Shown piece after piece: positions 26,411 through 52,700 of a stretch of DNA of 64,000 nt. The DNA comes from Thalia democratica (Eukaryota). The stretch spans positions 15,314,001 through 15,378,000 of the forward strand of contig OZ241827.1 in the NCBI GenBank assembly GCA_965202585.1, written 5' to 3'. Below the pieces are notes generated by a model. It saw only the letters and a list, made by a program, of their open reading frames with translations, was not told the origin of the DNA and did not search any database. A program made the translations under genes and the position numbers. Within the stretch, counting starts at the first letter, position 1. Each line of letters opens with the position of its first letter.

Positions 26411-26623
26411 TCAAATATCTATAGTGAACTTATTTCCATTCCAGTTTACTTGTCCACAATTGTGGTCCCTCTCCCTAGAATCAGCGTACTCTTTACTTGA
26501 TATGTTCATGTCGTTGTAGTACTCACCTATTCCTCTGTAGTCTTTATGAAACTTCTCGTTTTTGGTGTAGTCGTCTTTTTGCGACAAATCACAGTTTATC
26601 CACTTTTGCAAGCCGTTTGACAT
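26411..26623 (-). CDS. 70-aa orphan microprotein, copy A
   Basis: ATG-to-TGA ORF, GC-richer than its flanks, intact in all three units, with an upstream TATA box. Confidence 0.7.
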   Translation of the reverse strand: MSNGLQKWINCDLSQKDDYTKNEKFHKDYRGIGEYYNDMNISSKEYADSRERDHNCGQVNWNGNKFTIDI

Positions 26624-26674
26624 GCTTGTACAATTGATGTGTGAAAATATGCCAAGTTTACTTTTCGTTTTTGG

Positions 26675-26682
26675 CTTTTATA
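26675..26682 (-). promoter_or_regulatory. TATA box TATAAAAG of microprotein gene A
   Basis: Consensus TATA about 31 nt upstream of a CA initiator-like site. Conserved in B and C. Confidence 0.6.
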
Positions 26683-29600
26683 CCTTTTATCATGAAATTT
26701 TTCCTGCTAATATTAAACAATAACATGTTTTTTATTCAAAACTGAAATCAATACCAATTATGCTCAATGAGCACTTCTTATAAAAAATTGTTTGTATTTT
26801 TTAGTTAAAAGGAAGTTTAACCTGTTGATCAAAGAAACTTGAGCCTATATGAACTTTGTGAAACCTTACTTATTGTTTTTTATGCTTAGTTTTGTGACTT
26901 TTGTACAAATGTATGCAAAGTATATTTTTCAATATATTTTTTATATATATATTGTTGATATATGTTTTTTTGTTCTTGTTTTTTGTATTTACAGTAATAT
27001 GTGAGGTAATTGCAATTGAAAAAAACAAGTTCATTCATAAAGTTCAAACAAGGTTTGACGCTTTGATCATATAAAAACTTAAAATTTAGACCCTTTTTTT
27101 AAATAAATTGTTTTTTTTTGATTTTAAATTTTTTGCCGTTACGTTTTTTTGTTATCAATAAAAAAAATTAATAGTTGTAAAAATGTGTTAACAATTTTTT
27201 GTTTAACTTGATGATTAAACCAACTTGTTGTCATATGAACTTTGTAAAACACAGAAAATTCTTTTTGATGTAGTTTTGTTTTCGTGTTTGATGTTTAAAA
27301 GGTTCAAAGTTTTGTTTCAGTCATTGATTTATACTTGTTTGAAATGTTTTCCTATTAATAATAATATGTTTGTTAATTAAAATTACAAAAGTACCTATAG
27401 TCGTATAAACCTTGGTTGTATTACAAACTAAAACCTTGTTTTGATATAATTTTTTGTGGCTAATATGTAAGAAAATGCAATGTTATTTTTTTTTTTATAC
27501 TTTTATGTTGTCATTTTTTAGTTGTTGAAGTTATATGTTAAGAAATGTTTTTGTTGTTGTGATACTTAAATGTTTTTAATATTAGGTTCAAAGAAAGTAA
27601 GATCTGATGGTCAAAGCAGCTTGTTGTCGAATGAACTTTGTATAACATGAGTAGTTGTTTTGTTTTCTTACAAATTGCTAAATGTGTTTTCTTTTTATAT
27701 CCTGTTTTGCAACTTATTGTTTATAATTGTTGTTATATAATACTATTTATTCAAAAGTACATTTCAAACATTGAATGAGTTCTCAAACATAAACTTGCTT
27801 TAAAATAACTTTTGATGTAGGATAATGTTTGAATAAAATTACAATAACCAATAAAAACTTATTTTTTGTTGTAAAGTTTAAACGTAAGATCAAAGTCACA
27901 AATTTTTGACTTCTTTTATCCACTAAATGATACTTTTCTAAAAATATAAAAAAAACTTTTATACAAATCATTGAATTAAATAATTTGTTACTTTTATCTT
28001 CTGTGAAGTTTACGAAAAAAATATTATTTTCTTTTGTAAAAAACTATTTAAGTAAATAAAAAGATTGGTAAATTTAAATTAGTAAACATCATAAGCGAAA
28101 TTTTTGGAATGTTTTTATTTTAATCAAATTATTTTTTTATAAAACTTTTACTAGGTAGAATAATACATCAGAACTTTATTCTGTTTTGTTGTTAGTTTTT
28201 GTTCTTAGTAAATTTTCTATTATAAACTAAAACAACTACTTTGAACTCACTAAAAGATATTTTATTGCTGCTTGAAATTCAACATAAATAAAGCTAATGA
28301 TAAGCATACTTTAAACATCTTAATTACAATTTTCTCGTGTTTTTCTATAAAAACTAATAAAAAATCTCATGTAAAACTAACTAACAATTTCATTGATTTA
28401 AAATTCATTTAACATTAAAAGTAATCAATTTTTTTTTTCAGCAAACTGATATTTAAACAGACATATGTATAAATATTCAATAATTTCGTAACTTCAATTT
28501 GAGTTCTATTTTGTGTTCAAATTGCGAATCTATCGGTAAGTAAAATAATAAAAAACATGTCAGTTTTGAACGAAATTTGAGTCAAAATGTGCACATAAAA
28601 ATAAATAAATGTAACATTGTTTGTTATAATAAAAACTATTTTTTCGAAAGTAAAGAGATAATAGTTTGTAAAAAAGTTTGTTTTGTTTATATTATAAATA
28701 CTTACGTTTATATGCACTTTTAAAAGCTATTCCCGTGTTAAGCAATAAACAGTTATATAACGTTTGGTTTAACATAATTCGTAAGTTTTTAGAAATATTA
28801 AAATATTAAACACGTAACAAAAGTTTTTTTATTTCAAAACGGTGCTGATTTAAAAAACCATTTATGTAATAAATGACTAATGCTGTTTACAATATCAGGT
28901 TGTTTTAAATATGGTACAATAAATTACTATTTGATGTTTTATACTTGTTTAAACAGCCTTATACAATTATATAAGAGTCAAAACTAACCATTTAAAGTAC
29001 TTCGTTAATTAAATTTGTTAACTGTACTGAAAAAAATAAAGCTATTTGTTTCACCATCTAAAATTATTAAATTATGAGAAATGAATATAAAAGACTAAAA
29101 AAGATAGTTTAAGAAACTGTTCTAATAACTTCAAATAAAATATTTATAACAGCTTTTGATTGTTTTACTTGATTTACTTTTTCGAGAAATTAAAACAACC
29201 CAAAGCGTCTAAAGTTCAAAACTCTGGTTTGGTTACATGTTGCTCTTCTGTTTACAATTAAATACTTGGTAGTTATTTAAACCCTCAGCAATAACTATTT
29301 ACTTCATTTTAATTTAAGAATGTAAATTAATTTATAGTCTTTTGTAGGTTCACTATTAAATTTATTAGATACTTGTACTTTCAATTGCAAACTAGACAGA
29401 CATAAAAAACACTTGTTTTAATTACTTTTTATTTATAAAGCTACACTGTTTGTATAATTTGTGGTTGTAGTTACTTCCAACAACACATCCTAATTTTAAG
29501 AATATAAAAATCATCTCTAATAATTTTAAAATAAATTCATAGCCAAACGCATAATCATAGTAATTTATAAACTCATGTTTTTAAAATTTAGTCAGTACAG

Positions 29601-30491
29601 CAAACTAAAATATAGATTTTCTGCTGTCCGAATTTAAAGACTTGTTTAAGTAAATGCAAAATCAAACAACTAATAAAACAAAGATATGTTTGCATATGTC
29701 ACAAGAAACGTTTACAGCAACACTTTAAAAAAACTATTTATAAGTAGTAAATCAAATTACAAATAAATGCGCTTCATACATCATTAAACAATAACAAGAA
29801 AAATAGTATACATAGATCAACTTGGATGATAAATTTGTCAAATAGTTTTTTATAAAATAACTTTTGGAACAAAAAACTCAAAACACAACAATAACTGTTA
29901 CAAATGACGCTGGCAAAATACTTTATAAAAAAATGTTTTATTTGCAATAGTCATTAGAAAAATATAAATTGCCTACTCACTCAGTTGGCTATAAAAATAA
30001 ACGTCCACTAACTTTTAATTAAAGCATTGCAGCTGTATGCAATAAAAAAACACAACAAGTTATAAGTTGAGGTGTAGTAAATTTTATCTAAGGTAATTAA
30101 CTTGCATAAACCACATAAACAAAAAAACTTGGTTGCATGAACCAATGAAAAAAATAATGCCTGCTATATCAATTGACTATAAATTGAACTGCAAACATCA
30201 AAGTTAATGCTTTAACTAAAATCTCAAAAAAATTGCAGATGAAACTGATTTTAGTAAAAATTTCTGAAAATGTCACAAAAAATAAATTATTGGAATAATT
30301 ACTTTCCTAACGGGACCCAAGCCCAATGCACAGATAATATAAAAAATAAAAAGCCTACGTAGGCAATTGATTGCAAAGTGCACTGCGAAGTATCAAAATT
30401 GTACAAAACCTCATACAAGTTGCAGGCGCAGATGATTGTAGTAAATACTTCCTGATTAATTCAGCACCAAAAAATTACATGATTGAAACAT

Positions 30492-33267
30492 TCACTTTCC
30501 AAGCGGAACTCCGGCACCAATGTTGACCATCACCACGTACCTGATCTTGATCTTGCCCACTTCGTAGATGGCGTACTCGTCGAAGTTTACCAGGTAGTTG
30601 TCAACTTTGTTCATGTCCTTCATGGGACCGACTTCCATGTCTATGCCGTCCAATTTGACGCACCTACCCTAGTTTTGGTACCTGACAAATGTGTGAATGT
30701 CATTTAGTATTTTTATTTAATTAATTTAAGTTTACCTATAAAAACTCTGGGTTTTACTTAAAAAATAAAGACTAAATGTGCTAAAAATTAACAGTTATTA
30801 ATTAAAAGTTTATGATATTAAGCTACAAACTAGAGTTTTGTTACCTCTCACTGTTATTATGGATGTAATCATAACTTTAAAGTTCCTTACATTATTTAGT
30901 CTTACAATTTGTAGACTTAAATGACTTTAAAACGTAAAACAATGTTTCTCTTAAATATTGAAGTAAAATTTTTTGCACCTGCCAACAGTGTGAACGATTT
31001 TACTTTGGGGGGTTTTTCTCTCCGGCCAATACCATCTTTCCTGGACCATCTTGACATCAGTGTTACTTACATCAACTTCGCACAAGAGCAGGATACCCGG
31101 CCACATCTATCATAAATAACTAAAGAGTTATACTCGGCTCAAATAAATTTCAAAGGCTATATACTAAAAATAAACTCACAAATTCTATGTTGTTTAAGCT
31201 TTTCGTACCAATGATATACAACAAAAAGAACACAGGAGCAAATTACCTTTTTTTTATACAGAGCTAAAATTATTTAAATTATTTCGTTAGTAATGACACT
31301 TTAATGATTTTTTAATTGACATACAATATCTTAGCAATGCAAGTAAATTAAGTAGATGAGCTAATTAGATTTCAAGATTAAATAAAACCACCTTTTCTAT
31401 GGCACTACCTAGTGCCGCGTTGCAGTACTTGGACGCCTTCGAAGCGCAAGGTGTGAAGTATACAGCTTGTCCGTGAAGCTGCCCCCTAGTGGTCGGAATG
31501 CTGAACCCTCTGCGGAGTATGCCCGGCACGCAAGTCGAGTTGGTACCGTGCCAAAGAAGAAGAGGTTTCGGGTCTGGTGCTAATTTCAGGTTTGGAACAA
31601 CATTCTTATCATGAAAAGAAAGATTTTGATCAAAATTTTTAGATGAATTACGATCTTCAAGCAGAGATTTTGGAGCTGTATCCTGATTTGCAGCTGGAAC
31701 TGATTTCCATGCGGAGGCTGGTTTCTGAACAGCGGATTTTTTCTGTTGCAGTGCCAGTTTCTCAACTGAAGCTGACTTAAGACTTACAGCCGGGTTTCGA
31801 GCTGGATCTGGTTTCTGATCTTGAGCTAGATCCTGATCATCAAAAGAGAACACCTTGTCCACATTCAATTCAAACTTATGGTTTGGTGCGTGTGTAGTCC
31901 ACACTGCAGTTTCGATTATCTTGAACACTTCAGTTCCCTCTTCAATATGACGCAAGCGTGATGGGAAATCGTTGTTGACACCTTCTATAAAATCCAGACG
32001 GTTCAACTCGCTACTGAGCTTTATGTAGTTGTTTATGGGAATGGTGTATTTATTGAACGTCCAGCAGGGTATTAGAGTGTAAAATGCGGAACTCAAGCGT
32101 GGTAACTTGCTTTTTCGGATATCCCTCAAACACTTCATTACGTCAAAAAGAGTTTTTCTGGCCTCGTTAACCTGCTCGATAGGCATTCCAGACCACAAAC
32201 GCCTGAACTCCGCGGGGGCTGAACTGAAGCTTTTCGATCAGTTTCCGCTGCACAATTTTAATAACTCTTTGACCTGAGAACTCATTTGAGTCGAAGTCAA
32301 AGTATTTTGAATGGCGAGCATTGAATGCCAACGAGTGGCTGTAAAAGCGATTTACTCCACTCGTAAATCTCTGCCAACCGTGTTTTAGTCCCTCATTTGG
32401 CCAGTCTACGTTCACAGCCAGCTTAAACTTTTTCTCGAAATGCTCTATGGCAGCATTGATGGTGCTGTACTTACACACGGTGACTTCTGTGGTCGTGTGC
32501 TGGCTTCTGTGGTAGACAAAGAAACTACAGGATTTACAAGGTTAGTGGTACAGATGACCTAGCAAACAAATCTTCTTGGCAAGCAGCTGCAATACGATCA
32601 TTTCATTCTCGTCAAGAAAATGTGCTGAGGAAAATGTCGTTATGGTCAGACAGACGCTCATACTGACACCATCCACACTCAATACGACCAGATCTTTGTT
32701 GGAATTCCAAACCTTGTCGTTGCTCAAACTTAATATTCTATTTTGGTGGGTCTGATTCAGTTTTAGAGAGGTTTGATTTAAAATTCTGTTTTGGTTATCT
32801 TGACTTACATTTCTCCGTGAGTTAGATTGTGATTTGTCTCTCCATAAATCGGTTTCTCTCACACTTTTTGACTTGTATTGAATCCCTCTCCTCCATAAAT
32901 CGGTTTTTGAGTTGTATCGACTCCCTCTTGTCCATGGATCGGTTTCAATCACACTTTTTGAGTTGTATTGATTTCCTCTTCTCCATGAATAAGTTTGACT
33001 CTGATTACTGTTTGAATTTTTCTTATTGAATCTCCTCCAGACACTGGTCTGATTTCCACTTCTATTTCGGATTGTTTGACCCCAACTTCTAAGTTGACTA
33101 GGAGAATCAGCTTCTTTCAATCCTTGGGTGTGTTGAGTTGAACTTCTGCAAGGACTACTTTGATTTCCACTTCTACTTGGGCTTGGAGATTTAGATTTAA
33201 TTAAACCTGGATTCGTTTTAGTCTGATTTCTTTTTTCTAAACACACCTCAATGTTTTTACCACTCAT
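30492..33267 (-). pseudogene. PARP2/3-like ADP-ribosyltransferase pseudogene, copy A (exons 33267-31392, 31106-30979, 30681-30492)
   Basis: LSSAFYTLIP helical domain, LLWHGTN, AVYF, ILLLCEV and FDEYAIY motifs. Lesions: TAA at ~32542, +1 insertion at ~32285, TGA at 32238-32240, TAG at 30669-30671. Confidence 0.9.
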
Positions 33268-34196
33268 GACTGCCACTTGCAGTTGAAAACGTTTTGGTTT
33301 TTTTTTTATTGAGCTGCATAAAAAGTTTTTTAATTATAATACTAGCGGTTGTGTACACTAAAAAGAGTTAAAACATTGTTTTATAATATGTTATGTCGTA
33401 AGTTATATTTTTTTTACAAAGTCACTACCAGTGTTGCTAGTCTTTGAATCAAAATATATAAAAAAACTGGCTTGAATTTTCAGAAACACTTTTTAAACCT
33501 TTTTAGCTATTTCTTATCAGACATGGAAGCAATATTTGATGGAAGGAGTATTTAAGCTAAATTCTACTCAAAATTTTATGTAAAATATAGCTTATTTTAG
33601 ATAAATCATAGCTAAGGCATTTTACTTCAGAAACTAGATAGCTTTTACAAAAAAAAAAATCTCTATTGAATTCAAACTTAGGTTAAACATTGTGATCAAA
33701 GGTAAAGGATTAGGTAGAATATAGTGTGTTTTTTACATTAAAATAAATTCTACTATTAATAAATTCATATGTGTGACCTAATGGTGTACGGCAAAACTTC
33801 CAACGTTTTTGAATATGTAAGTTATTTACTTGTGACCACTAGCTTGTTAAAGTCTCGTTACTATCTGGTTACTGTTAGGGTCCTAATGAGAGCTTAATAA
33901 CTTAATAACTTTTGTTTTACAATTTAACAAACAAAACATTAACAGTCAGGAATTTAGAAAAAATGCCATTGTAATCAAATATCCAAATTGAACACACTTA
34001 GTAAGTTATAAAACATGTTATATTAAACATAAAATAACAAGGAAATTAGAAACATATGCTTTTGTAACCAAATATTTATATTAAACTAATTTTTTAAAAA
34101 CTAACTGAAGTTTTACAGTACAACTTCTTTAATGTACATCTTGATAAAATAAACTTTACAAAGTTAAAAAAGAAGGCAGAAAATTTACAAACACAA

Positions 34197-34409
34197 TCAA
34201 ATATCCATAGTGAACTTATTTCCATTCCAGTTTACTTGTCCACAACTGTGGTCCCTCTCCCTAGAATCAGCGTACTCTTTACTTGATGTGTTCATGTCGT
34301 TGTAGTACTCACCTATCTCTCTGTAGTCTTTATGAAACTTCTCGTTTTTGGTGTAGTCGTCATTTTGCGACAAATCACAGTTTATCCACTTCTGCAAGCC
34401 GTTTGACAT
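34197..34409 (-). CDS. 70-aa orphan microprotein, copy B
   Basis: Same features as copy A. Intact. Confidence 0.7.
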   Translation of the reverse strand: MSNGLQKWINCDLSQNDDYTKNEKFHKDYREIGEYYNDMNTSSKEYADSRERDHSCGQVNWNGNKFTMDI

Positions 34410-34460
34410 GCTTGTACAATTGATGTGTGAAAATATGCGAAGTTTACTTTTCGTTCTTTG

Positions 34461-34468
34461 CTTTTATA
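34461..34468 (-). promoter_or_regulatory. TATA box of microprotein gene B
   Basis: cttttata on the plus strand, same spacing as in A. Confidence 0.6.
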
Positions 34469-37400
34469 CATTTTATCATCAAGTGTTTCCTTTTAATAAT
34501 AAACAATAACATGTTTTTTATTCAAAACTGAAATCAATACCACTTATGCTCAATGAGCAGTGCCCATAAAAACTTGTTTGTTTTTTTAAAGTTTAAAGGA
34601 AGTTTAACCTGTTGATCAAAGCAAATTGTGCCTGTATGAACTTTGTAAAACCTTGCTATTTGTTTTGATTTTTCTTTTTATGACTTTTGTACAAGTGTAT
34701 GCAAAGTATAGTTTTCAATATATTGTTTATATATATATATTGTTGATATATATTTTTTTGTTTTTGTGTTTTTTATTTACAGTAATATGTAAGGTAATTG
34801 CAATTAAAAAAAACAAGTTCATTCATAAAGTTCAAACAAGGTTTGACTCTTTGATCATATAACTATGTAAAATACATATAACTAGTTTTTGCTGAGCTGC
34901 TTTATTTTGTATTTAAATTTTTTATCGTTACGTGTTTTTAATAAGTAACATAAATAATAATTAATAAGTAAGAGTTGTAAATGTGTGTTAATAAAATTTT
35001 TGTAAAATCTGATGATCAAAGCAACTTTTGGTCATGTGAAATTTGTAAAATGATATTTTTTTGTGATGTTTTTTTTCGTGTTCGATGTTTTAAAAGGCTT
35101 AAAGTTTTGTTTTTCGTTTTTGTTTCACAGTTATTTGACATGTGTTTCCTATCATTGTAATAATAATATATGTTAATATAATATAATGTAATAATATATG
35201 TAATAAACTTAACATTAATATAATAATATGTTTGTTAATTGAAATTAATAAAGTACCTATAGTAACTTGTTGTCGTATCAACCTTGGTTGTTTTACAAAC
35301 TAAAACCTAGTTTTGATATAATTTTTTGTGGCTGATATATAAGAAAATGCAATTTTTTATATTTGTTTTTATTGTTTTCATTTTTTAGTAATTGAAGTCA
35401 TATGTGTAAAAATATTTTAGTTATAGTGATAGCTGCATGTTTTCAATATTAAGTTCAAAGAAAGTAAGATCTGATGATCAAAGCAGCTTGTTGTCGAATG
35501 AACTTTGTATAACATAAATAGTTGTTTTGTTGCAAATTGCTAAAAGTGTTTTGTTTTTATATCCTGTTTTGCAACATCTTGTTATTATATAATATTATTT
35601 ATTCAAAAAGTGCATTTAAACATTGAATGAGAACTCAAATATAAACTCGCTTTAAAGTAATTTTTGATGAACGAAAATGTTTGAACAAATTTACAATAAC
35701 CAAAAAAAAATTATTTGTTGTAAAATTTAAACGTAAGATCAAAGTCACTAGTTTTTGACATCTTTTATCCACTAAATGATACTATTCTAAAAATGTTTAA
35801 AAAAACTTTTATACAAAGTCATTGAATTAAATTTTTGTTACTTTTATCTTCTGTGGAGTTTACAAAAAAAAATTTATTTTCTTTTGTAAAAAACTATTTA
35901 AGCAAATAAAAAGATTGGTAAAGTTAAATTAGTAAACATCATAAGTGAAATTTTTGAAACGTTTTTATTTTAATCAAATTATTTTTGTATAAAACTTTAC
36001 TAGGTAGAATAATACACCAGAACTTTATTCTGTTTTGTTGTTAGTTTTTGTTATTTTTGTTCTTAGTAAATTTTCTAATATAAACTAAAACAAATATGAA
36101 CTACTTTGAACTCACTAAAATATATTTTATTGATTTATTAAATTTTATCTTTAAATTCAACAAAATACAGTTAATGATAATCTTACTTTAAACATCTTAA
36201 TTACAAGTTTATCTTGTTTTTCAATACAAAACTAATAAAGAATCTCATGCAAAACTAACAAACAATTTCATTGATCTATAAATCTTATAACATTAAAAGT
36301 AAAAAAATTTAATTTTTCAGCAAACTGATATTTAAACAGACATATATATAAATATTCAACAATTTCGTAACTTCAATTTGAGTTCTATTTTGTGTTCAAA
36401 TTGCGAATCTATCGGTAAGTAAAATAATACTAAAAATGTCAGTTTTGAACGAAATTTGAGTCAAAATGTGCACATAAAAATAAATAAATGTAACATTGTT
36501 TGTTATAATAAAAACTATTTTTTCGAAAGTAAAGAGATAATAGTTTGTAAAAAAGTTTGTTTTGTTTATATTATACATACTTACTTTTGTATGCACTTTT
36601 AAAAGCTATTCCGGTGTTAAGTAATAAATAATTATATAAAATTTGATTTAACATAATTCGTAAGTTTTTAGAAATATAAAAAAATTAAATACGTAACAAA
36701 AGTTTTTTATTTCAAAACGGTGCTGATTAAAAAAACCATGAATGTAATAAATGACTAATGCTGTTTATAATATTAGGTTGTTTTAAATATGGTACAATAA
36801 ATTACTATTTGATGTTTTATACTTGTTTAAACAGCCTTATATAATTATATAAGAGTCAAAACTAACCATTTAAAGTACTTCGTTAATAAAATTTGTTAAC
36901 TGTTCTGATAAAGATAAAGTTATTTGTTTCACCAACTAAAATTGATAAATTAATAGCAATTAATATATACAATTAAAAAGATAGTTTACGAAACTGTTTT
37001 AATAACTTCAAATAAAATCTATACAACAGCTTTTGTTGGTTTCACTTGATTTACTTTTTTGAGAAATTAAAACAACTTAAAGCGTCCAATTTTTGTTTTA
37101 ATTGGAATTATTTTTTTTTATATGCTAAAACGTTTAATATGAAATTGATATTTTTTTACGTAATTTTTTTAAATCTTTATATAATCTGATAACTAAATAA
37201 TTAATGTCTATTAACATTTTTTAATTTATAGAAATAACTTTTGAAGATTTTTAAAAACAGTTTAAGCTAAATATTTTATTTTAATGTTGAACAGACATGT
37301 AATTAACTTTTTGATTGTATAACTACCAATACAAAACTAATCATTAAGCTACACTCTTTGTATAATTTGTGGTTGTAGTCACTTCCAACAACACATCCTA

Positions 37401-38408
37401 ATTTTAAGAATATAAAAATCATCTCTAATAATTTTAAAATAAATTCATAGCCAAACACATAATCATAGTAATTTATAAACTCATGTTTTTAAAATTTAGT
37501 TAGTACAGCAAACTAAAATATAGATTTTCTGCTGTCCGAATTTAAAGACTTGTTTAAGTAAACGCAAAATCAAACAACTGATAAAACAAAGATATGTTTG
37601 CATATGTCACAACAAACGTTTACAGCAACACTTTAAAAAAACTATTTATAAGTAGTAAATCAAATTACAAATGAATGCGCTTCATACATCATAAAACAAT
37701 AACAAGAAAAATAGTATACATAGATCAACTTGGATGATAAATTTGTCAAATAGTTTTTTATAAAATAACTTTTGGAACAAAAAACTCAAAACACAACAAT
37801 AACTGTTACAAATGACGCTGGCAAAATACTTTATAAAAAAATGTTTTATTTGCAATAGTCATTAGAAAAATATAAAAAAATTGCCTACTCAGTCAATTGG
37901 CTATAAAAATAATTGTCACGTCCACTTGCTTTTAATTAAAGCATTGCAGCTGTATGCAATAAAAAAACACAACAAGTTATAAGTTGAGGTGTAGTAAATT
38001 TTATCTAAGGTAATTAACTTGCATAAACCACATAAACAGAAAAACTTGCTTGCATTAACCAATGAAAAAAATAATGCCTGCTATATCAATTGACTATAAA
38101 TTGAACTGCAAACATCAAAGTTAATGCTTTAACTAAAATCTCAAAAAAATTGCAGGTGAAACTGATTGTAGTAAAAATTTCTGAAAATGTCACAAAAAAT
38201 AAATTATTGGAATAATTACTTTCCTAACGGGACCCAAGCCCAATGCACAGATAATATAAAAAATAAAAAGCCTACGTAGCCAATTGATTGCAAAGTGCAC
38301 TGCGAAGTATCAAAATTGTACAGAACCTCATACAAGTTGCAGGCGCAGATGATTGTAGTAAATACTTCCTGATTAATTCAGCACCAAAAAAATACATGAT
38401 TGAAACAT

Positions 38409-41188
38409 TCACTTTCCCAGCGGAACTCCGGCACCAATGCTGACCATCACTACATACCTGATCTTCATCTTGCCCACATCGTAGATGGAGTACTCGTCAA
38501 AGTTGACCAAGTACTTGGCAACTTTGTTCATGTCCTTCATGGGACCGACTTCCATGTCTATGCCGTCCAATTTGACGCACCTACCCAAGTTTTGGTACCT
38601 GACAAATGTGTGAATGTCATTTAGTATTTTTATTTAATTAATTTAAGTTTACCTATAAAAACTCTGGGTTTTACTTAAAAAATAAAGACTAAATGTGCTA
38701 AAAATTAACAGTTATTAATTAAAAGTTTATGATATTATGCTACAAACTAGAGTTTTGTTACCTCTCACTGTTATTATGGATGTAATCATAACTTTAAAGT
38801 TCCTTACATTATTTAGTTTTACAATTTGTAGACTTAAATGACTTTAAAACGTAAAACAATGTTTCTCTTAAATATTGAAGTAAAATTTTTTGCACCTGCC
38901 AACAGTGTGAACGATTTTACTTTGGAGGGTTTTTCTCTCCGGCCAATACCATCTTTCCTGGACCATCTTGACATCAGTGTTACTTACATCAACTTCGCAC
39001 AAGAGCAGGATACCCGGCCACATCTATCATAAATAACTAAAGAGTTATACTCGGCTCAAATAAATTTCAAAGGCTATATACTAAAAATAAACTCACAAAT
39101 TCTATGTTGTTTAAGCTTTTCGTACCAATGATATACAACAAAAAGAACACAGGCGCAAATTACTTTTTTTTTATACAGAGCTAAAATTATTTAAATGATT
39201 TCGTTAGTAATGACACTTTAATGATTTTTTAATTGGCATACAATATCTTAGCAATGCAAGTAAATTAAGTAGATGAGCTAATTAGATTTCAAGATTAAAT
39301 AAAACCACCTTTTCTATGGCACTACCTAGTGCCGCGTTGCAGTACTTGGACGCCTTCGAAGCGCAAGGTGTGAAGTAGACCGCTGGTCCGTGAAGCTGCC
39401 CCTAGTGGTCGGAATACTGAACCCTCTGCGGAGTATGCCCGGCACGCAAGTCGAGTTGGTACCGTGCCAAAGAAGAAGAGGTTTCGGGTCTGGTGCTAAT
39501 TTCAGGTTTGGAACAACATTCTTATCATGAAAAGAAAGTTTTTGATCAAAATTTTTGGATAAATTACGATCTTCAAGCAGAGATTTTGGAGCTGTATCGT
39601 GATGTGCAGCTGGATCTGATTTCCATGCGGAGGCTGGTTTCTGAACAGCGGATTTCTTCAGTTGCAGTGCCAGTTTCTCAACTGAAGCTGGCTTAAGACT
39701 TACAGCAGGGTTTCGAGCTGGATCTGGTTTCTGATCTTGAGCTAGATCCTGATCATCAAAAGAGAAAACCTTGTCCACATTCAACTCAAACTTATGCTTT
39801 GATGCGTGTGTAGTCCTCACTGCAGTTTCGATCATCTTGAACACTTTAGTACCCTCTTCAATGAAACGCAAGCGTTTTGGGAAATCGTTGTTGACACCTT
39901 CTATAAAGTCCAGACGGTTCAACTCGCTACCGAGCTTTGTGTAGTTGTTTATGGGAATGGTGTATTTGTTGAACGTCCAGCAGGGTATTAGAGTGTAAAA
40001 TGCGGAACTCAAGCTTGGTAACTTGCTTTTTCGGCCATCCCTCAAACACTTCATTACGTCAAAAAGAGTTTTTCTGGCCTCGTTAACCTGCTCGATAGGC
40101 ATTCCAGACCACAAACGCCTGAACTCCGCGGGCGCTGATTCAAATTTTCTTGGTGGGTTTCCATTGCACAATTGTAACAGCTCTTTGACCTGAGAACTCG
40201 CTGAGTCGAAGTCAAAGCAATTTGAATGCCGAGCATTGAACGTCAATGAGTGGTTGTAAAAGCGATTTACCCCACTCGTAAATCTCTGCCAACCGTGTTT
40301 TAGTCCCTCATTTGGCCAGTCTACGTTCACAGCCAGCTTAAACTTTCTCTCGAAATGCTCTGTGGCAGCATTGATGGTGCTGTACTTACACACGGTGACT
40401 TCTGTGGTCGTGTGCTGGCTTCTGTGGTAGACAAAGAAACTACACGTTTTACAAGGTTGGTGGTACAGGTGACCTAGCAAACAATTCTTCTTGGCAAGCA
40501 GCTGCAATACGACAATTTCATACTCGTCAAGAAAATGTGCTGAGGAAAATGTCGTTTTGGTCAGACAGACACTCATACTGACACCATCCACACTCAATAC
40601 AACCAGATCTTTGTTTGAATTCCAAACCTTGTATTTGCTTAAACTTAATATCCTATTTTGATTGGCCTGATTCAGTTTTGGAGAGGTTTGATTTAAAATT
40701 CTGTTTTGGTTATTTTGACTCTTATTACTCCGTGAGTTAGATTGTGATTTGTCTCTCCATAAATCGGTTTCTCTCACAATTTTTGAGTTGTGTTGAGTCC
40801 CTCTTCTCCATAAATCGGCTTCACTCACACTTTTTGAGTTGTATCGATTTCCTCTTCTCCATGAATTAGTTTGACTCACACTTTTTGAGTTGTATCGATT
40901 TCCTCTTCTCCATGATTTAGTTTGACTCTGATTACTGTTTGATTTTTTCTGATTGAAGCTCCTCCAGATACTGGTCTGATTTCCACTTCTATTTGGGATT
41001 GTTTGACCCCAACTTCTAAGTTGACTAGGAGAATCAGCTTCTTTTAAATCTGGGGTGTGTTGAGTAGAACTTCTGCAAGGACTACTTTGATTTCCAAGTC
41101 TACTTCGGCTGGGAGATTTAGATTCCATTAAAACTGGATTCGTTTTAGTCTGATTTTCTAACGACACATTAATGCTTTTACAATTCAT
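38409..41188 (-). pseudogene. PARP2/3-like gene, copy B (exons 41188-39309, 39023-38896, 38598-38409); single 1-bp frameshift, possibly an assembly error
   Basis: Open through the WGR-like, helical and LLWHGT regions. A C4 run at 39399-39402 (C5 in copy A) shifts the frame before AVYF. Exons 2 and 3 are intact with GT-AG borders and matching phases (0, 2). Confidence 0.85.
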
Positions 41189-42830
41189 GACTGCCACTTG
41201 CAGTTGAAAACGTTTTTGAATTTTTTTTTAATTGACCTGCACAAAAAAACTTTTTAAATTATTAAATTTTTATACTAGCGTTTGTGTACACTAAAAAGAG
41301 TTAAAACATTGCTTTATAATATGTTATGTCATAAGTTGTAATTTTTTTTACAAAGTCACTACCAGGGTTGCTAGTCTTTGGATCAAAATAAATAAAAAAC
41401 TAAATGAATTTTCAGAAACCCTTTTAAAACCTATTCAACTATTTATTATTAAGACATGGAAGCAATATTCGATGGAAGGAGTTTTTAAACTAAACTATAC
41501 TCAAAATTTTATGTAAAATATAGTTTTTTTATAGATTAATCATAGATAAGGCTTTTTACTTCTGAAACTACATAGCTTTAAAAAAAAAAAAAAAAACTCT
41601 ATTGAATCTAAACTTAGATAAAACATTGTGATTAAAGGTAAAAGATTAGGTAGAATATAGTGTGTTTTTTACATTAAAATAAATTCTTCTATTAATAAAT
41701 TCATATGTGTGACCTAATGGTGTACAGCAAAACTTCCAACGTTTTTGAATATGTAAGTTATTTACTTGTGGCCACTAGCTTGTTAAAGTCTGGTTGCTAT
41801 CTGGTTACTGTTAGGGTCTAAATGAGATCATCTAAACCTCTCTGAGTTGAACATCGCAATATTGAAAACATATAGTCAATACATATACAAAACATAGGTC
41901 TCAAAACTTTTGTAAAGTTTAGACTTCCTATAAAATTTTAAACCTAAAGTTTAACAATGTTTGTTCTTAATGATTTTACAAAAGCAAACACTATGACCAT
42001 AAAAATATCAATTATTATAATAATTTAAGTGATAAAATATAAATCTTAAAAACATTTTGTGTATAGTACTTCAAATCATACTGAGGTTCAATAAAAAAAA
42101 CAATTAAGAAAAGTACTTTAGTGTGTATGATATTCTTTAAATTATAAAATTTGTTAAATTATAAAAATCAAAATTATGTTATTTTAGAATTGATAAAATT
42201 TTTAAGACTTCTGATAGTATTAAGTATTCAATTAAGTACTTATAACTAGCACCATTAAATTATTGAGCTTTAAATATTTCCATTTACACAAATACAATTT
42301 TTTGATTACACATAAAAAGCATGCAAACATTGAACACGTTATTTCATTTTTATATTCGTTTTCATATTTATCTATAGTTTTATTTTCAAACTCGTATAAT
42401 ACCAGGGATTAAAAGTGTATTTTTGTAACTAACAACATTTAAAGTTTCAAAGATACAATTATAACTGGTGGAAACTAAGTAGAATAAGTGTTTTTTGATA
42501 AAAACTTTAAAAACTTTGACTTACATTCATAATTTAATAACTTTAGTTTTACAATTTCACAAACAAAACATTAACAGTCAGAAATTTAGAAAAATATGCC
42601 ATTGTAATCTGATATCCAATTTAAACACATTTAAATAAATTATAAAACATGTTATATTAAACATAAAATAACCAGAAAATTAGAAATGTATGCTTTTGTA
42701 ACCAAGTATTTATATTAAACTTATTTTTTAAGAACTAACTGAAGTTTTACAGTACAACCTGTTTAATGTACATCTTGATAAAATAAACTTTACAAAGTAA
42801 AAAAAGAAGGCAGAAAATTTACAAACACAA

Positions 42831-43043
42831 TCAAATATCCATAGTGAACTTATTTCCATTCCAATTTACTTGTCCACAATTGTGGCCCCTCTCCCTAGAA
42901 TAAGCGTACTCTTTACTTGATATGTTCATGTCGTTGTAGTACTCACCTATCTCTCTATAGTCCTTCTGAAATTTCTCGTTGTTGGTGTAGTCGTCATTTT
43001 GCGACAAATCGCAGTCTCTCCACTTCTGCAGGCCGTTTGACAT
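42831..43043 (-). CDS. 70-aa orphan microprotein, copy C
   Basis: Intact. Versus B I count 6 synonymous and 8 non-synonymous changes. Confidence 0.7.
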   Translation of the reverse strand: MSNGLQKWRDCDLSQNDDYTNNEKFQKDYREIGEYYNDMNISSKEYAYSRERGHNCGQVNWNGNKFTMDI

Positions 43044-43093
43044 GCTTGTACAATTGATGTGTGAAAATATGCAAGTTTACTTTTCGTTTTTGG

Positions 43094-43101
43094 CTTTTAT
43101 A
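43094..43101 (-). promoter_or_regulatory. TATA box of microprotein gene C
   Basis: cttttata conserved at the equivalent position. Confidence 0.6.
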
Positions 43102-47010: not shown

Positions 47011-49775
47011 TCACTTTCCAAGCGGAACTCCGGCACCAATGTTGACCATCACCACGTACCTGATCTTGATCTTGCCCACATCGTAGATGGCGTACTCGTC
47101 GAAGTTTACCAGGTACTTGGCAACTTTGTTCATGTCCTTCATGGGACCGACTTCCATGTCTATGCCGTCCAATTTGACGCACCTACCCAAGTTTTGGTAC
47201 CTGACAAATGTGTGAATGTCATTTAGTATTTTTATTTAATTAATTTAAGTTTACCTATAAAAACTCTGGGTTTTACTTAAAAAATAAAGACTAAATGTGC
47301 TAAAAATTAACAGTTATTAATTAAAAGTTTATGATATTATGCTACAAACTAGAGTTTTGTTACCTCTCACTGTTATTATGGATGTAATCATAACTTTAAA
47401 GTTCCTTACATTATTTAGTCTTACAATTTGTAGACTTAAATGACTTTAAAACGTAAAACAATGTTTCTCTTAAATATTGAAGTAAAATTTTTTGCACCTG
47501 CCAACAGTGTGAACGATTTTACTTTGGGGGGTTTTTCTCTCCGGCCAATACCATCTTTCCTGGACCATCTTGACATCAGTGTTACTTACATCAACTTCGC
47601 ACAAGAGCAGGATACCCGGCCACATCTATCATAAATAACTAAAGAGTTATACTCGGCTCAAATAAATTTCAAAGGCTATATACTAAAAATAAACTCACAA
47701 ATTCTATGTTGTTTAAGCTTTTCGTACCAATGATATACAACAAAAAGAACACAGGAGCAAATTACCTTTTTTTTATACAGAGCTAAAATTATTTAAATGA
47801 TTTCGTTAGTAATGACACTTTAATGATTTTTTAATTGGCATACAATATCTTAGCAATGCAAGTAAATTAAGTAGATGAGCTAATTAGATTTCAAGATTAA
47901 ATAAAACCACCTTTTCTATGGCACTACCTAGTGCCGCGTTGCAGTACTTGGACGCCTTCGAAGCGCAAGGTGTGAAGTAGACCGCTGGTCCGTGAAGCTG
48001 CCCCTAGTAGTCGGAATACTGAACCCTCTGCGGAGTATGCCCGGCACGCAAGTCGAGTTGGTACCGTGCCAAAGAAGAAGAGGTTTCGGGTCTGGTGCTA
48101 ATTTCAGGTTTGGAACAACATTCTTATCATGAAAAGAAAGTTTTTGATCAAAATTTTTGGATAAATTACGATCTTCAAGCAGAGATTTTGAAGCTATATC
48201 CTGATGTGCAGCTGAATCTGATTTCCATGCGGAGGCTGGTTTCTGATCAGCGGATTTTTCAGTTGCAGTGCCAGTTTCTCAACTGAAGCTGGCTTAAGAC
48301 TTACAGCAGGGTTTCGAGCTGGATCTGGTTTCTGATCTTGAGCTAGATCCTGATCATCAAAAGAGAAAACCTTGTCCACATTCAACTCAAACTTATGCTT
48401 TGATGCGTGTGTAGTCCTCACTGCAGTTTCGATCATCTTGAACACTTCAGTTCCCTCTTCAATATAACGCAAGCGTTTTGGAAATCGTTGTTGACACCTT
48501 CTATAAAGTCCAGACGGTTCAACTCGCCACCGAGCTTTGTGTAGTTGTTTATGGGAATGGTGTATTTGTTGAACGTCCAGCAGGGTATTAGAATGTAAAA
48601 TGCGGAACTCAAGCGTGGTAACTTGCTTTTTCGGATATCCCTCAAACACTTCATTACGTCAAAAAGAGTTTTTCTGGCCTCGTTAACCTGCTCGATAGGC
48701 ATTCCAGACCACAAACGCCTGAACTCCGCGGGCGCTGATTCAAATTTGCTTGGTGGGTTTCCATTGCACAATTGTAACAGCTCTTTGACTTGGGAACTCG
48801 CCGAGTCGAAGTCAAAGTTTTTTGAATAGCGAGCATTGAATGTCAACGAGTGGTTGTAAAAGTGATTTACGCCACTCGTAAATCTCTGCCAACCGTGTTT
48901 TAGTCCCTCCTTTTGCCAGTTTACATTCACAGCCTGCTTAAACTTTTTCTCGAAATGCTCTATGGCAGCATTGATGGTGCTGTACTTACACACGGTGGCT
49001 TCTGTGGTCGTGTGCTGGCTTCTGTGGTAGACAAAGAAACTACACGTTTTACAAGGTTGGTGGTACAGGTGACCTAGCAAACAATTCTTCTTGACAAGCA
49101 GCTGCAAAACGGTCATTTGATTCTCTACAAGAAAACCTGCTAAGGAAAATGTCGTCTTGGTCAGACAGACGCTCATACTGACACCATCTACACTCAATAC
49201 AACCATATCTTTGTTTGAATTCCAAACCTTGTCGTTGCTTAAACTTAATATCCTATTTTGATTGGCCTGATTTAGTTTTGGAGAGGTTTGATTTAAAGTT
49301 CTGTTTTGATTATTTTGACTCTTATTTCTCCATGAGTTAGATTGTGATTTGTTTCTCCATAAATCGGTTTCTCTCACACTTTTTGAGTTGTAATGAATCC
49401 CTCTCCTCCATAAATCGGTTTTTGAGTTGTATCGACTCCCTCTTTTCCATGGATCGGTTTCACTCTTTTTTTTGAGTTGTATTGATTTCCTCTTCTCAGT
49501 GAATAAGTTTGACTCTGATTACTGTTTGACTTTTTCTTATTGAAGCTCCTCCAGACACTGGTCTGATTTCCACTTCTATTTCGGATTGTTTGACCCCAAC
49601 TTCTAAGTTGACTAGGAGAATCAGCTTCTTTCAATCCTTGGGTGTGTTGAGTTGAACTTCTGCAAGGACTACTTTGATTTCCACTTCTAATTGGGCTGTG
49701 AGATTTAGATTCCATTAAACCTGAATTTGTTTTAGTCTGATTTTCTAACCACTCATCAATGCTTTTACTATTCAT
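47011..49775 (-). pseudogene. PARP2/3-like gene, copy C (exons 49775-47911, 47625-47498, 47200-47011); four 1-bp deletions
   Basis: Deletions in homopolymer runs at ~49466-49473, ~48480, ~48257 and 48001-48004 (the last is shared with B). No nonsense substitutions noticed. Exon 3 is intact with FDEYAIY. Confidence 0.85.
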
Positions 49776-52700
49776 GACTGACACTTGCAGTTGAAAACGT
49801 TTTTGAATTTTTTTTTTTAATCGAGCTTCATAAAAAAACTTTTTAAATTATTAAATTATTATACTAGCGTTTGTGTACACTAAAACGAGTTAAAACATTG
49901 TTTTATAATATAATATATAATAAGTTAAAATTTGTTTTACAAAGTCCCTACCAGGGTTGCTAGTCTTTGAATCAAAATCAATAAAAAAACTGGCTGGAAT
50001 TTTTAGAAACCCTTTTAAAACCTATTTAGCTATTTCTTAATAAGACATGGAAGCAATAATTGATGGAAGTAGTTTTTAAACTAAATTCTACTCAAAATTT
50101 TATGTAAAATATAGTTTTTTATAGATTAATCATAGCTAAGGCATTTTACTTCAGAAACTACATAGCTTTCACAAAAAAACTCTATTGAATTCAAACGTAG
50201 ATGAAACAACATTGTGATTAAAGGTAAAGGATTAGGTAGAATATAGTATGTTTATTACATTAAAATAAATTAGACTATTAATAAATTCATATGTGTGACC
50301 TAATAATGTAGGGCAAAACTTCCACCGTTTTTGAATATGTAAGTTATTTACTTGTGGCCACTAGCTTGTTAAAGTCTGGTTACTACTGGGTTACTGTTAG
50401 GGTCCTAATGAGAGCATTTAAACCTCTCTGAGTTGAACATCGCAATATTGAAAACCTTTAGTCATTACATATACAAGAATAGGTCTCAAAACTTTTGTAA
50501 AAATAAGACTTCCTATGAAAATCAAGACTTTAAGTTTAACAATGTTCTTAATGATTTTACAAAAGCAAACACTATGACCATAAAAATATCAATTATTATA
50601 ATAATTCAGGTCATAAGTATAAATCTTAAAAACATTTTATATATATTACTTCGAATCATACAGAGTTAGGTTCAATAAAAAAATAATTAAGAAAAGGGCT
50701 TTAATGTGTATGATATTCTTTAAATTATAAAACTTAAAGTTATGTTATTTTAAAATCAATAAAATTTTTAAGACTTCTGATAGAATTAATATTTAATTAA
50801 GTACTTATAACTAGCACCATTAAATTGAATAGCTTTAAATATTTCTATTTACACAAATACAATTTTTTGATTACACATAAAAAGCATGTGAGCATTGAAC
50901 ACGTTATTTCATTTTTATATTCTTTTTCATATTTATCTCCAATTTTATTTTCAAACTCGTATAATACCAGGGATTAAAAGTGTATTTTTGTAACTAACAA
51001 CATTTAAAGTTTCAAAGATGTTAATTTAACTTATGTTACTTAATTCATGTTAATTAAAAATGTATTTCCTATAAATATCTTCTTGAAGCAATGTTTAATA
51101 CATACAACGGTGCCTTTATTTCTATTTACTGTACGTTAAGATCACAGTTACCAGAATTTATGAAATTAAAAACTCTGAAAACTGAATAAACTGAGTAGTA
51201 TGTTTTAACTTAAAGTATGTTGATCTAGTAAATGTGTGGCGACTTTTTCATAAAACCTTTTATAAAGTTTTCAGTGGAAAGCAGGGCTACCATTATTAGA
51301 GTTTTTGTAAATCTTGCAGTTTTAAACAATTTGATTATTTACATTTATTTTTAATGTTGTGAATTTTTTCTTAACATATTAAGTGTAAATAATAAAAGTC
51401 GCTCTAATTTCATCTCTACTGCCGACCCCAAACCAAATTAATTAAGTTAAATTTAAAAAAATATTGCCAATAAAACCGTTTCACAGCTCCAAAAGGTGCT
51501 TAAAAATTTAAAGTATAAAGAAGTACTTATACTGATCGCTTGATACTTTGATACTATTTTAGGTAACTAAAGTGTGAAGTTTTTTAGATTTTTGTTTTTC
51601 ATAATAAAAAAACAAATTTATAAAAGCAAAATTAAAAAAATTTTTTAGTCGTTTATTGATATTGAAAAACTTAGCTTGTTCTAATATATAAATTATTTAA
51701 ATATAGTTACAAATTAGATTAATGAATTTTAAACATTTTATTTGTCTATTAGTCATTTGTTTATAGTTTTGATAAGAGACAAATTGTTTTAAAATATGAT
51801 TTTGAAATTGCTAATTAACTTGCGTTTAATACAAAAACTTTTATTTGTTTTGTATCAATTTGTGTTAAAAAAAAGACATCTAAACATATTTATAATATTT
51901 ATGGAACTCATCAACTTGATATTTAAGTTCAAAGTTTTGAAACAACTAAAGAAGATAAACTTGCTATAAACTTCTTAAAACAATTTTGTTTTTTTTAATT
52001 CAAGCATGGTTTTATTCAAATTTATCTATTGCGGGACAGATTTGCACGTTTGCATTTCACCAATTGCGGGCTACACTTTATGCAGAATAAAAACGATCCT
52101 TGTCTAGCATGAACATTTGAATGCGGATATATATGTGTTGTAAATTATTCTAAATTAAAAAAAAATTAAAAAGCTTTGGATAAAATTAAAACAAGTTGGT
52201 GTCTTAATAACAGCTATGGCCTACTAAATAAATCAGTTATTAAAGTTTCCTAACTTTTACAAATTTACACTAGAAAATATTATAAACAGCACAAACTCGC
52301 TTCTCAGCAAAATTTTAATACTAGATAGAAATATTTTTTCTTTATAATTTTTTCATTTTTATTTTTAATTTAGCTTTACTTTTTACTAAAATCAGTACGC
52401 TATAAACAATAAGATTTTAAACAATAACAACCAATTTTAAAATTATTGAAACAAAAGTTCTTATTTTAGTTTAAATCAAATATACTTACTTTCCTTATTG
52501 AAATAGAAGATTAACAAGTTGTGAACTTGTTCACTTCCTTTACTTTAATAACTCTTTGTAGTGGTGTTTATGGTTTTTTACAATTTAAAAATCGACCATA
52601 TTTTCCTAACAAACAGCATCAAGTAGATGACTAAATGTAGAAGAAATGTGATTTCTATTATTTTATTATAATTTATGAAAAATATTAATGAAACAATTAA

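What the first reader, a model, noticed from the sequence alone, without database searches (positions are those of the whole stretch)
34197..34468. 70-aa microprotein stays intact in all three copies while its PARP neighbour decays; possible WWE-like half domain
Seen: no stops or indels in A, B or C. TATAAAAG is conserved ~31 nt before an initiator-like CA. B vs C shows 6 synonymous and 8 non-synonymous changes, more synonymous than neutrality would usually give (small sample). The upstream frame is broken in C, so the ATG is the likely start. Inference, by eye only: W...IGEYY...VNWNGNKFTIDI recalls the WWE pattern W..IE.aY...i.G..Y.iDl. WWE domains bind ADP-ribose and accompany PARPs and RING ligases. 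However, the spacer is longer and the last WWE strand is missing.
Basis: partly seen in the sequence, partly recalled or inferred. Interest (0 to 1): 0.7.

Follow-up and report, generated by a model that had tools for sequence, protein, structure and literature searches.

The report
Conserved orphan 70-residue protein gene

Summary
The 70-codon ORF (minus strand, 34197-34409) is real. It recurs intact at 26411-26623 and 42831-43043, in three ~8-kb tandem units that each carry a broken PARP-like gene. Genome-wide there are 11 copies at three loci, and all are open.

Coding selection is clear at family level:
- 29 of 47 variable sites are third codon positions (p=6e-5).
- Omega is 0.22 (test against omega=1: p~1e-7).
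- The only indel is in frame, and GC3 is 0.56 in 21-28% GC flanks.
- Two marine-metagenome homologues (80% and 41% identity, 70 and 75 aa) keep the start, the stop and an invariant N-terminal 13-mer, while their flanks are unalignable.

It is a separate single-exon gene with its own TATA box, 3.9 kb beyond the PARP stop.

The WWE idea fails: no Pfam match, hhalign probability 2.7%, and a helical though low-confidence model. No other relative or fold match was found, and the protein is absent from public protein sets.

The three window copies on their own look relaxed (N:S 12:5, omega~0.46, not distinguishable from neutral). The finding's own copy has changed two residues of the otherwise invariant motif.

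Expression is unproven and function is unknown. It is best read as an undescribed lineage-restricted small protein, co-amplified with the PARP gene by segmental duplication.

The parts
34197..34409 (-). 70-codon ORF plus stop: copy U2, the finding's own copy. Carries derived changes R9I, D10N, N21K and Q26H.
26411..26623 (-). Copy U1 of the ORF. It is intact and shares R9I, D10N, N21K and Q26H with U2.
42831..43043 (-). Copy U3 of the ORF. It is intact and keeps the ancestral MSNGLQKWRDCDL N-terminus.
34461..34468 (-). TATAAAAG box 51 nt before the ATG. Matching boxes lie at 26675-26682 and 43094-43101. A TATAAAAG also lies 49 nt before the ATG in the 80%-identical metagenome contig, whose other flanks do not align.
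34410..34437 (-). Inferred 5' UTR, running from an initiator-like CA about 31 nt after the TATA box to the ATG. The start site is inferred and not observed.
   Evidence: inference
34410..34584 (-). Upstream block of 175 nt that is as conserved as the ORF across 11 copies (94%, almost no gaps). Probably the promoter. It contains a near-palindrome, TGCTCATTGAGCA, at 34547-34559.
34128..34133 (-). ATTAAA, a candidate poly(A) signal 63 nt after the stop, present in all three window copies. Untested.
34160..34196 (-). Post-stop stretch with a GU-rich run and an invariant TTTTCTG. The TTTTCTG aligns in all 8 sequences compared, including the 41%-identical homologue. Weak evidence for a 3' UTR element.
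30492..33276 (-). Neighbour: PARP-like gene copy A. The large exon 33276-31365 is broken by a stop and a frameshift. Two small catalytic exons lie within 30951-31106 and 30492-30653, and the latter ends in the gene's stop. So the small ORF of unit 1 lies 3.9 kb beyond the PARP stop.
39326..41197 (-). Neighbour: large exon of PARP-like copy B. It gives a 623-aa open frame, but a 1-nt frameshift precedes the catalytic Tyr.
47883..49784 (-). Neighbour: large exon of PARP-like copy C, with at least four frame changes.

Best explanation
This is a complete, single-exon, protein-coding gene of an undescribed, lineage-restricted family. It has its own TATA/initiator-type promoter, a short leader, 70 codons and a conserved stop.

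The product is a small (8.4 kDa), acidic (pI ~5), very hydrophilic but aromatic-rich soluble protein with no signal peptide or membrane segment.

My inferred mechanism, at no more than about 30% confidence, is as follows. The protein folds into a compact three-helix-plus-hairpin module built on its conserved aromatic and hydrophobic positions. It then acts by binding a partner through the invariant N-terminal helix MSNGLQKWRDCDL, which holds the only invariant cysteine.

Its link to the PARP gene is historical and not mechanistic. One ancestral PARP-plus-small-gene segment of about 8 kb was copied repeatedly, within and between two loci 52 Mb apart on the same chromosome and onto an unplaced contig. 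Selection then kept the small gene while most PARP copies broke.

Within this window's array, constraint on the small gene appears relaxed. The finding's own copy may be a redundant or drifting paralogue. The best-conserved copies lie at C2:67.03-67.13 Mb.
For: Shown:
- There are 11 copies in the genome, all with open frames.
- Variable sites by codon position are 10/8/29, p=6e-5. Summed pN/pS is 0.16 in the ORF frame against 0.96-2.1 in four of the other five frames. The antisense frame that shares wobble positions gives 0.24.
- The codon model gives omega 0.22, LRT 28.8, p~1e-7. Using genomic copies only it gives omega 0.34, p~0.002.
- The ORF evolves at 0.22 substitutions per site over the tree, against 0.74 upstream and 1.76 downstream.
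- The flanks carry 8-10 frameshifting gap runs per 213 nt. The ORF has none, only one in-frame 6-nt insertion.
- GC is 0.40 and GC3 0.56, against 0.21-0.28 in the flanks.
- P0001 (70 aa, 80% identity) lies on a metagenome contig where only the ORF, about 25 nt of leader and the TATA box align. pS against it is ~0.5 and pN 0.05-0.09.
- P0003 (75 aa, 41% identity, Tara Oceans contig) has the same start and end. Its first 13 residues are identical despite at least 8 synonymous differences, and in-frame stops lie just upstream of its ATG. It hits the 11 loci reciprocally at E 5e-10.
- The PARP reading frame ends at 30492, 3.9 kb before ORF copy U1.
- More distant PARP paralogues on C5 and C6 have no such neighbour.

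Inferred:
- The fold. Both AF2 runs give the same helix-helix-helix-hairpin layout, and aromatic and hydrophobic positions are the ones kept in the 41% homologue.
- The binding role of the N-terminus.
Against: No transcript or peptide has been shown. The only RNA-library hit is one low-depth contig from a marine metatranscriptome. It covers the last 27 nt of the ORF and about 270 nt downstream at ~94% identity, with a further 167 nt of that contig too diverged to lay on the stretch, and it could be DNA carry-over.

The structure models are low confidence (pLDDT 49 and 53), so the fold and the binding mechanism are guesses.

The three window copies alone do not differ from neutral expectation (N:S 12:5, p=0.13). 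They differ from the other copies (8:16, Fisher p=0.03).

Copies U1 and U2 have changed R9 and D10 of the invariant motif. Every contig laid over these codons from three DNA runs of related organisms reads R-D (table 3).

Two copies (L003, L004) have lost the stop codon.

Flank rates are inflated by AT-rich, poorly alignable sequence.
Confidence: 0.75

Rival explanations
1. The finding's own copy, and perhaps all three window copies, is a redundant duplicate now drifting neutrally. It is still open only because 213 nt is a small target. The family's function is carried by the copies at C2:67.03-67.13 Mb.
For: Substitutions on window branches are N:S 12:5 (omega ~0.46), not different from neutral (p=0.13). 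They are different from the other copies' 8:16 (omega ~0.10, Fisher p=0.03).

U1 and U2 changed R9I and D10N inside a motif that is invariant even in the 41% homologue.

All three adjacent PARP copies are broken.

All contigs laid over codons 9-10 from three DNA runs of related organisms read R-D.
Against: No window copy has a stop or indel, while nearby flanks do have indels. The promoter block and TATA box are equally well kept in the window copies. The counts are small and the p-values are nominal. Gene conversion may blur the branch assignment, since the flank tree and the CDS tree disagree.
Confidence: 0.3
2. The small protein is a trans-acting partner of this PARP subfamily, acting as an accessory factor, regulator or ADP-ribosylation substrate. 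That role would explain why the pair is always copied together and why the small gene survives wherever any PARP copy is still active.
For: In all three loci the small gene lies about 3.9-5 kb downstream of a PARP copy on the same strand. The protein has an invariant Cys and many Asp, Glu, Ser and Tyr residues, which are the known acceptor types for ADP-ribose (background knowledge). Three PARP copies with an intact large exon survive in the second cluster, where the small gene is most constrained.
Against: The adjacency is fully explained by copying one ancestral segment, because all copies are recent paralogues. PARP paralogues on C5 and C6 have no such neighbour. The Tara homologue sits 300 nt behind a Sushi-domain exon, not a PARP, although only 566 nt upstream are known. 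There is no similarity to any known PARP-binding module.
Confidence: 0.1
3. It is a degenerate WWE-like half domain that binds ADP-ribose or poly(ADP-ribose).
For: There is a by-eye resemblance of W...GEYY...V.W.G.KF..DI to the WWE pattern. The only stretch hhalign aligns is that C-terminal motif. A PARP gene is the neighbour.
Against: PF02825 does not match any family member, even at E<=10. The same model finds four other loci in the genome but none of these 11. The hhalign probability is 2.7%. No WWE chain appears among PDB sequence hits or in the Foldseek PDB and Atlas searches, though the model used there is weak. The predicted secondary structure is mostly helical. The last strands, which carry the binding residues, are absent.
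Confidence: 0.03
4. It is not an independent gene. It could be an exon or upstream ORF of a PARP transcript, or a conserved non-coding or gene-converted block that happens to be open.
For: It lies 0.9-1.6 kb upstream of the next PARP copy in the window array. The 175 nt upstream are as conserved as the ORF. No transcript data are available.
Against: The third-position bias, the omega values and the in-frame indel are specific to this frame. The start and stop are conserved in two distant homologues, with in-frame stops directly upstream of the ATG. The PARP frame ends 3.9 kb upstream. The distance to the next PARP downstream varies from 0.9 kb to 14 kb, and copy U1 is followed by a retrotransposon instead. 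There is no Rfam match.
Confidence: 0.04

Closest known systems
WWE domain (Pfam PF02825), the iso-ADP-ribose-binding module of RNF146, PARP11, PARP14 and others
   Same: It has similar length and aromatic-rich content. It shares a short C-terminal motif (hydrophobic-x-hydrophobic-x-G-x-x-aromatic-x-hydrophobic-D) and has a PARP gene as genomic neighbour.
   Different: There is no HMM or profile-profile match. The predicted structure is helical and not beta-rich. The spacing is longer, the final strands with the binding residues are missing, and it is a stand-alone protein, not a domain of a ligase or PARP.
Taxonomically restricted (orphan) small protein genes, such as the other microprotein families noted by this scan in the same genome
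   Same: It has a short single-exon ORF, no detectable relatives outside a narrow lineage, tandem amplification and purifying selection detectable only by comparing copies. It is also absent from public protein sets.
   Different: This family has its own sequence signature (invariant MSNGLQKWRDCDL and GEYYND). It is aromatic-rich and probably folded, not proline-rich or disordered, and it is always co-duplicated with a PARP paralogue.
Small accessory factors of PARP enzymes, such as HPF1 for PARP1/2 (a functional analogy only)
   Same: It would be a separate polypeptide acting with a PARP1/2-like enzyme. The neighbour's catalytic domain is closest to PARP1/2.
   Different: There is no sequence or fold similarity and it is about five times smaller. 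The link rests on gene neighbourhood alone, which segmental duplication already explains.

Membership tests
WWE domain (PF02825) | Match to the family profile at or above its curated cut-off (21.1 bits) | tested here: not met
   No WWE row even at E<=10 for any of 10 family members. The genome-wide PF02825 search hits four other loci and none of the 11 ORF loci.
WWE domain (PF02825) | Profile-profile similarity to bona fide WWE sequences | tested here: not met
   hhalign of family alignment A4 against this genome's WWE exons (A5) gives probability 2.7% over 30 columns. A5 is shallow (4 partial sequences), so sensitivity is limited.
WWE domain (PF02825) | Beta-rich half-barrel fold (six strands and one helix) | tested here: inconclusive
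   Two AF2 models predict three helices plus one hairpin, but at pLDDT 49 and 53. Foldseek against PDB and the Atlas search give no WWE and no significant hit.
WWE domain (PF02825) | C-terminal strands carrying the Gln and Arg residues that bind iso-ADP-ribose | tested here: not met
   The protein ends at ...FTMDI, directly after the motif that would be the fourth strand. The stop is conserved in 9 of 11 copies and in both outside homologues.
WWE domain (PF02825) | ADP-ribose or poly(ADP-ribose) binding | not testable with these tools
   Needs a binding assay.
Exon of the neighbouring PARP gene | Reading-frame continuity or splice sites joining it to PARP exons | tested here: not met
   The PARP catalytic exons end in a stop at 30492. 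The ORF has its own ATG, preceded by an in-frame TAA inside the TATA box, and its own stop.
Protein-coding gene under purifying selection | Excess of synonymous over non-synonymous change in the proposed frame only | tested here: met
   Omega 0.22, p~1e-7. Frame controls. 29 of 47 variable sites are at codon position 3.
Protein-coding gene under purifying selection | Transcription and translation | tested here: inconclusive
   Only one low-depth contig from a marine metatranscriptome touches the ORF's 3' end. The other three runs behave as DNA.

The most novel reading that the evidence does not exclude
The 70-residue protein founds a new small fold or motif family of pelagic tunicates that works in trans with the co-amplified PARP1/2-like enzymes. 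It could, for example, be a dedicated accessory factor or a cysteine or acidic-residue acceptor. On this reading the PARP-plus-small-gene cassette is a two-component ADP-ribosylation module, and the small component is the indispensable one.
Probability: 0.07. Interest if true: 0.7.

Novelty: new member of a known kind. Interest (0 to 1): 0.35.

Why it matters
It adds a well-supported and apparently unannotated protein family to a poorly studied animal lineage. The family has 11 genomic copies and two marine-metagenome homologues.

It also shows how a gene far below usual ORF-calling thresholds can be validated from paralogue comparison alone. The invariant 13-residue N-terminus gives a concrete handle for experiments.

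It corrects a tempting functional label. The PARP neighbourhood is a by-product of segmental duplication, and there is no evidence for a WWE-type ADP-ribose reader.

The contrast between tightly constrained copies in one cluster and relaxed copies in this window is a small natural experiment on the fate of co-duplicated genes.

Tried and rejected
- WWE homology: rejected on sequence grounds by the Pfam scans, the genome-wide PF02825 search and hhalign against the genome's own WWE exons.
- A weak Pfam MobC_2 hit (E 0.029, 14.5 bits against a cut-off of 27.5; 2 of 10 members) is taken as chance.
- The PDB sequence search found only a chance cGAS/DncV-like hit at E 0.79.
- ESM Atlas feature searches with two family members found nothing usable.
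- Foldseek PDB and Atlas shape searches with the low-confidence model gave no significant match.
- The word-index protein search found only P0001, and for P0003 only itself.
- The exhaustive representative search found P0001 and P0003, plus two repeat-driven false hits: P0002, a bacterial repeat protein, and P0004, a repeat translation.
- JGI metagenome and IMG/VR scans found no relatives.
- A full-text search for the N-terminal motif found no paper.
- RNA evidence: the single run search returned one RNA library and three DNA-like runs. The laid contigs do not show a transcript.
- A bacterial-type promoter and terminator scan is uninformative for a eukaryote.
- There is no Rfam family in 33000-35500.
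- An apparently missing ORF copy on contig C367 turned out to reflect a different duplication breakpoint and not a decayed copy.
It was rerun from stored files.

Full report
**What is there**

On the minus strand, 34409 to 34197, lies an ATG-to-TGA frame of 70 codons. A 20-mer from it recurs at two more places in the window. A self-comparison shows three tandem units, 26304-34094, 34095-42728 and 42729-51019, that are 84-94% identical. Each unit holds one copy of the small ORF (26411-26623, 34197-34409, 42831-43043). About 5 kb further along the plus strand, each also holds the large exon of a PARP-like gene on the same minus strand.

- There are no stops or indels in the three ORF copies.
- TATAAAAG lies 50-51 nt before the ATG, with a CA about 31 nt after the first T of the box.
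- There is a 1-nt deletion in the leader of the 42k copy.
- There are exactly 6 synonymous and 8 non-synonymous differences between the 34k and 42k copies.

In the 34k copy the frame upstream of the ATG is closed by a TAA inside the TATA box. The ORF is therefore complete.

**The PARP neighbour**

The 623-aa frame of copy B matches the Pfam PARP catalytic domain, and weakly the PARP regulatory domain. The catalytic part of an intact paralogue is closest to PARP1/2 chains in the PDB.

The gene has two further small exons, which carry the LLLCEVDV and DEYAIYE motifs. The second of these ends in the stop codon at 30492 in unit 1. The small ORF therefore lies 3.9 kb beyond the end of the PARP coding sequence and is not part of it.

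All three PARP copies in the window are damaged:
- Copy A has an in-frame stop and a frameshift.
- Copy B has a 1-nt frameshift after TTRG, just before the catalytic tyrosine.
- Copy C has at least four frame changes.

**Genome-wide picture**

The window is C2:15314001-15378000 of an 802-Mb assembly. A six-frame search finds 11 copies of the small ORF, and none contains a stop:
- three copies in the window;
- seven copies at C2:67.03-67.13 Mb, in a 33.6-kb repeat that holds two copies each;
- one copy on the unplaced contig C367.

Three copies carry an in-frame 6-nt insertion, and two have lost the stop through a TGA-to-CGA change. PARP paralogues accompany the ORF at all three loci, with the ORF about 4-5 kb downstream. 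Three of these paralogues keep an intact 653-aa large exon. More distant PARP paralogues on C5 and C6 have no such neighbour.

One PARP unit on C367 lacks the ORF. This is because that duplication used a different breakpoint, not because a copy decayed.

**Is it coding?**

Several lines of evidence say yes.

- Across the 11 loci, conservation peaks from about -175 to +225 relative to the ATG. It reaches 94-95% identity with almost no gaps there, against 77-91% further upstream and 60-80% from about 300 nt beyond the stop.
- Among eight distinct genomic haplotypes plus one outside sequence, variable sites fall 10/8/29 on codon positions 1/2/3 (p=6e-5).
- Summed pN/pS is 0.16 in the ORF frame. 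It is 0.96-2.1 in four other frames, and 0.24 in the antisense frame that shares wobble positions. That antisense frame is not open.
- A Goldman-Yang codon model gives omega 0.22 and kappa 2.3. Fixing omega at 1 costs 14.4 log-likelihood units (p~1e-7). With genomic copies only, omega is 0.34 (p~0.002).
- Tree length is 0.22 substitutions per site in the ORF, against 0.74 upstream and 1.76 downstream.
- The flanks carry 8-10 distinct frameshifting gap runs per 213 nt, while the ORF has none. About 7% of random substitutions would disable it. Even allowing generously for poor alignment of AT-rich flanks, 11 open copies are not expected by chance.
- GC is 0.40 in the ORF (GC3 0.56) against 0.21-0.28 around it.

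**Outside relatives**

The word-index search found one protein, P0001. It has 70 aa and 80% identity, and it lies on a 563-bp ENA metagenome contig. On that contig only four things align to the window: the ORF, about 25 nt of leader, a TATAAAAG 49 nt before the ATG, and a short post-stop stretch. The rest does not align. pS against the genomic copies is about 0.5 and pN 0.05-0.09.

The exhaustive representative search with a family profile added P0003. It has 75 aa and E 7e-10, and it comes from a Tara Oceans contig. P0003 is 41% identical and has the same start and end. Its first 13 residues, MSNGLQKWRDCDL, are identical even though the codons differ at eight or more synonymous sites. GEYYND and most aromatic and hydrophobic positions are also kept. 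It hits the 11 loci reciprocally at E 5e-10.

On the Tara contig the ATG is preceded by in-frame stops and, 24 nt upstream, by a pyrimidine tract ending in CAG. This could be a cis- or trans-splice acceptor, which is my inference. A Sushi-domain exon lies 300 nt upstream on that contig, and there is no PARP.

No relatives were found in JGI metagenomes or IMG/VR. None of seven genomic protein versions exists in the 15-billion-protein collection. The gene therefore appears to be unannotated.

**What the protein is not**

- The Pfam scans of all members gave no WWE match, only a chance-level MobC_2 row.
- The WWE model finds four genuine WWE exons elsewhere in this genome but none of the 11 loci.
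- Two AlphaFold runs agree on helix 4-15, helix 23-35, helix 39-53 and a hairpin at 58-69, but at pLDDT 49 and 53.
- Fold searches with the model, PDB sequence searches and Atlas feature searches gave nothing significant.
- The protein stops before the part of a WWE domain that binds iso-ADP-ribose.

**What it most likely is**

It is a small, acidic (pI ~5), hydrophilic (GRAVY -1.5) but aromatic-rich (13%) soluble protein. The 41% homologue keeps the hydrophobic and aromatic positions and lets the polar ones vary, which suggests a folded module. The fully invariant polar N-terminus, with the only invariant cysteine, looks like the functional surface. I infer a binding role but cannot show it.

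The PARP linkage is best explained by repeated copying of one ancestral segment of about 8 kb.

**A caveat on the finding's own copy**

Parsimony mapping on the codon tree puts 12 non-synonymous and 5 synonymous changes on the window branches (omega ~0.46, not different from neutral, p=0.13). The other genomic branches carry 8 and 16 (omega ~0.10, p=4e-8). The difference is nominally significant (Fisher p=0.03).

The 26k and 34k copies share R9I, D10N, N21K and Q26H, and two of these fall inside the invariant motif. In three DNA runs of related organisms, every contig laid over these codons reads R-D (table 3). So the window array, whose PARP copies are all broken, may be relaxing as a whole.

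**Expression**

This remains open. My single run search returned one RNA library (a marine metatranscriptome) and three runs that cover the whole 5.9-kb stretch like DNA. One 463-nt, depth-4 contig of the RNA library matches 33925-34223. That is the last 27 nt of the ORF plus about 270 nt downstream, at ~94% identity. The remaining 167 nt of the contig run further downstream but are too diverged to lay on the stretch. This is suggestive at best.

Earlier scan notes call the genome a salp (a pelagic tunicate). I did not test that. The marine origin of the homologues and of the RNA contig is consistent with it.

**Verdict**

The coding-gene reading is supported, and the WWE reading is not. This is an undescribed, lineage-restricted small protein family of unknown function. 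That is a common kind of thing, here unusually well supported by sequence evolution.

Noticed in passing
window 17655-23531: An LTR retrotransposon lies directly downstream of ORF copy U1. Its direct repeats, 17655-18324 and 22859-23531, are 97% identical, and gag- and pol-like frames lie at 19850-23067. It occupies the place where a further PARP unit might have been expected.
   Followed up: no
G000:C367:7000-26000 (L014, L006): This unplaced 59-kb contig carries a variant of the array: two broken PARP copies and only one small ORF. The junction joins a unit truncated at the equivalent of window 35845 to sequence like window 51987-50949. It may be an alternative haplotype or a separate duplicate.
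   Followed up: partly
L003 and L004 (G000:C2:67065952-67066161 and 67099523-67099732): Two identical copies have lost the stop codon (TGA to CGA). Their open frame is 116 codons against 88 in most other copies, which implies about 28 extra codons past the former stop.
   Followed up: no
L012:480-563 and L019:373-413: Both metagenome contigs carry a degenerate partial second copy next to the intact gene. One has an internally deleted copy downstream, and the other has an N-terminal remnant (MDANGLQTWRDLL) 190 nt upstream. The small gene therefore seems prone to local tandem duplication in other organisms too.
   Followed up: no
window 34160-34196, and the same place in U1, U3, L005, L009, L012 and L019: A post-stop stretch with a GU-rich run and an invariant TTTTCTG aligns in all eight sequences compared, including the 41%-identical homologue. 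It may be a 3' UTR element, or a chance alignment in T-rich DNA.
   Followed up: partly
window 34547-34559 (also 26761-26773 and 43180-43192): A near-palindrome, TGCTCATTGAGCA, lies about 140 nt upstream of the ATG in all three window copies. It is a candidate transcription-factor site. It is not seen on the metagenome contig.
   Followed up: no
window 2831-3324 and 5297-5816: Two arrays of short tandem repeats in inverted orientation are 84-93% identical. They give long artificial open frames of RVRSD-type repeats.
   Followed up: no
window 11678-12763: An open frame of 361 aa ends in a RING-H2 finger (Pfam zf-RING_2, E 7e-9). It is preceded by an internally repetitive Asn, Arg and Pro-rich region.
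   Followed up: no
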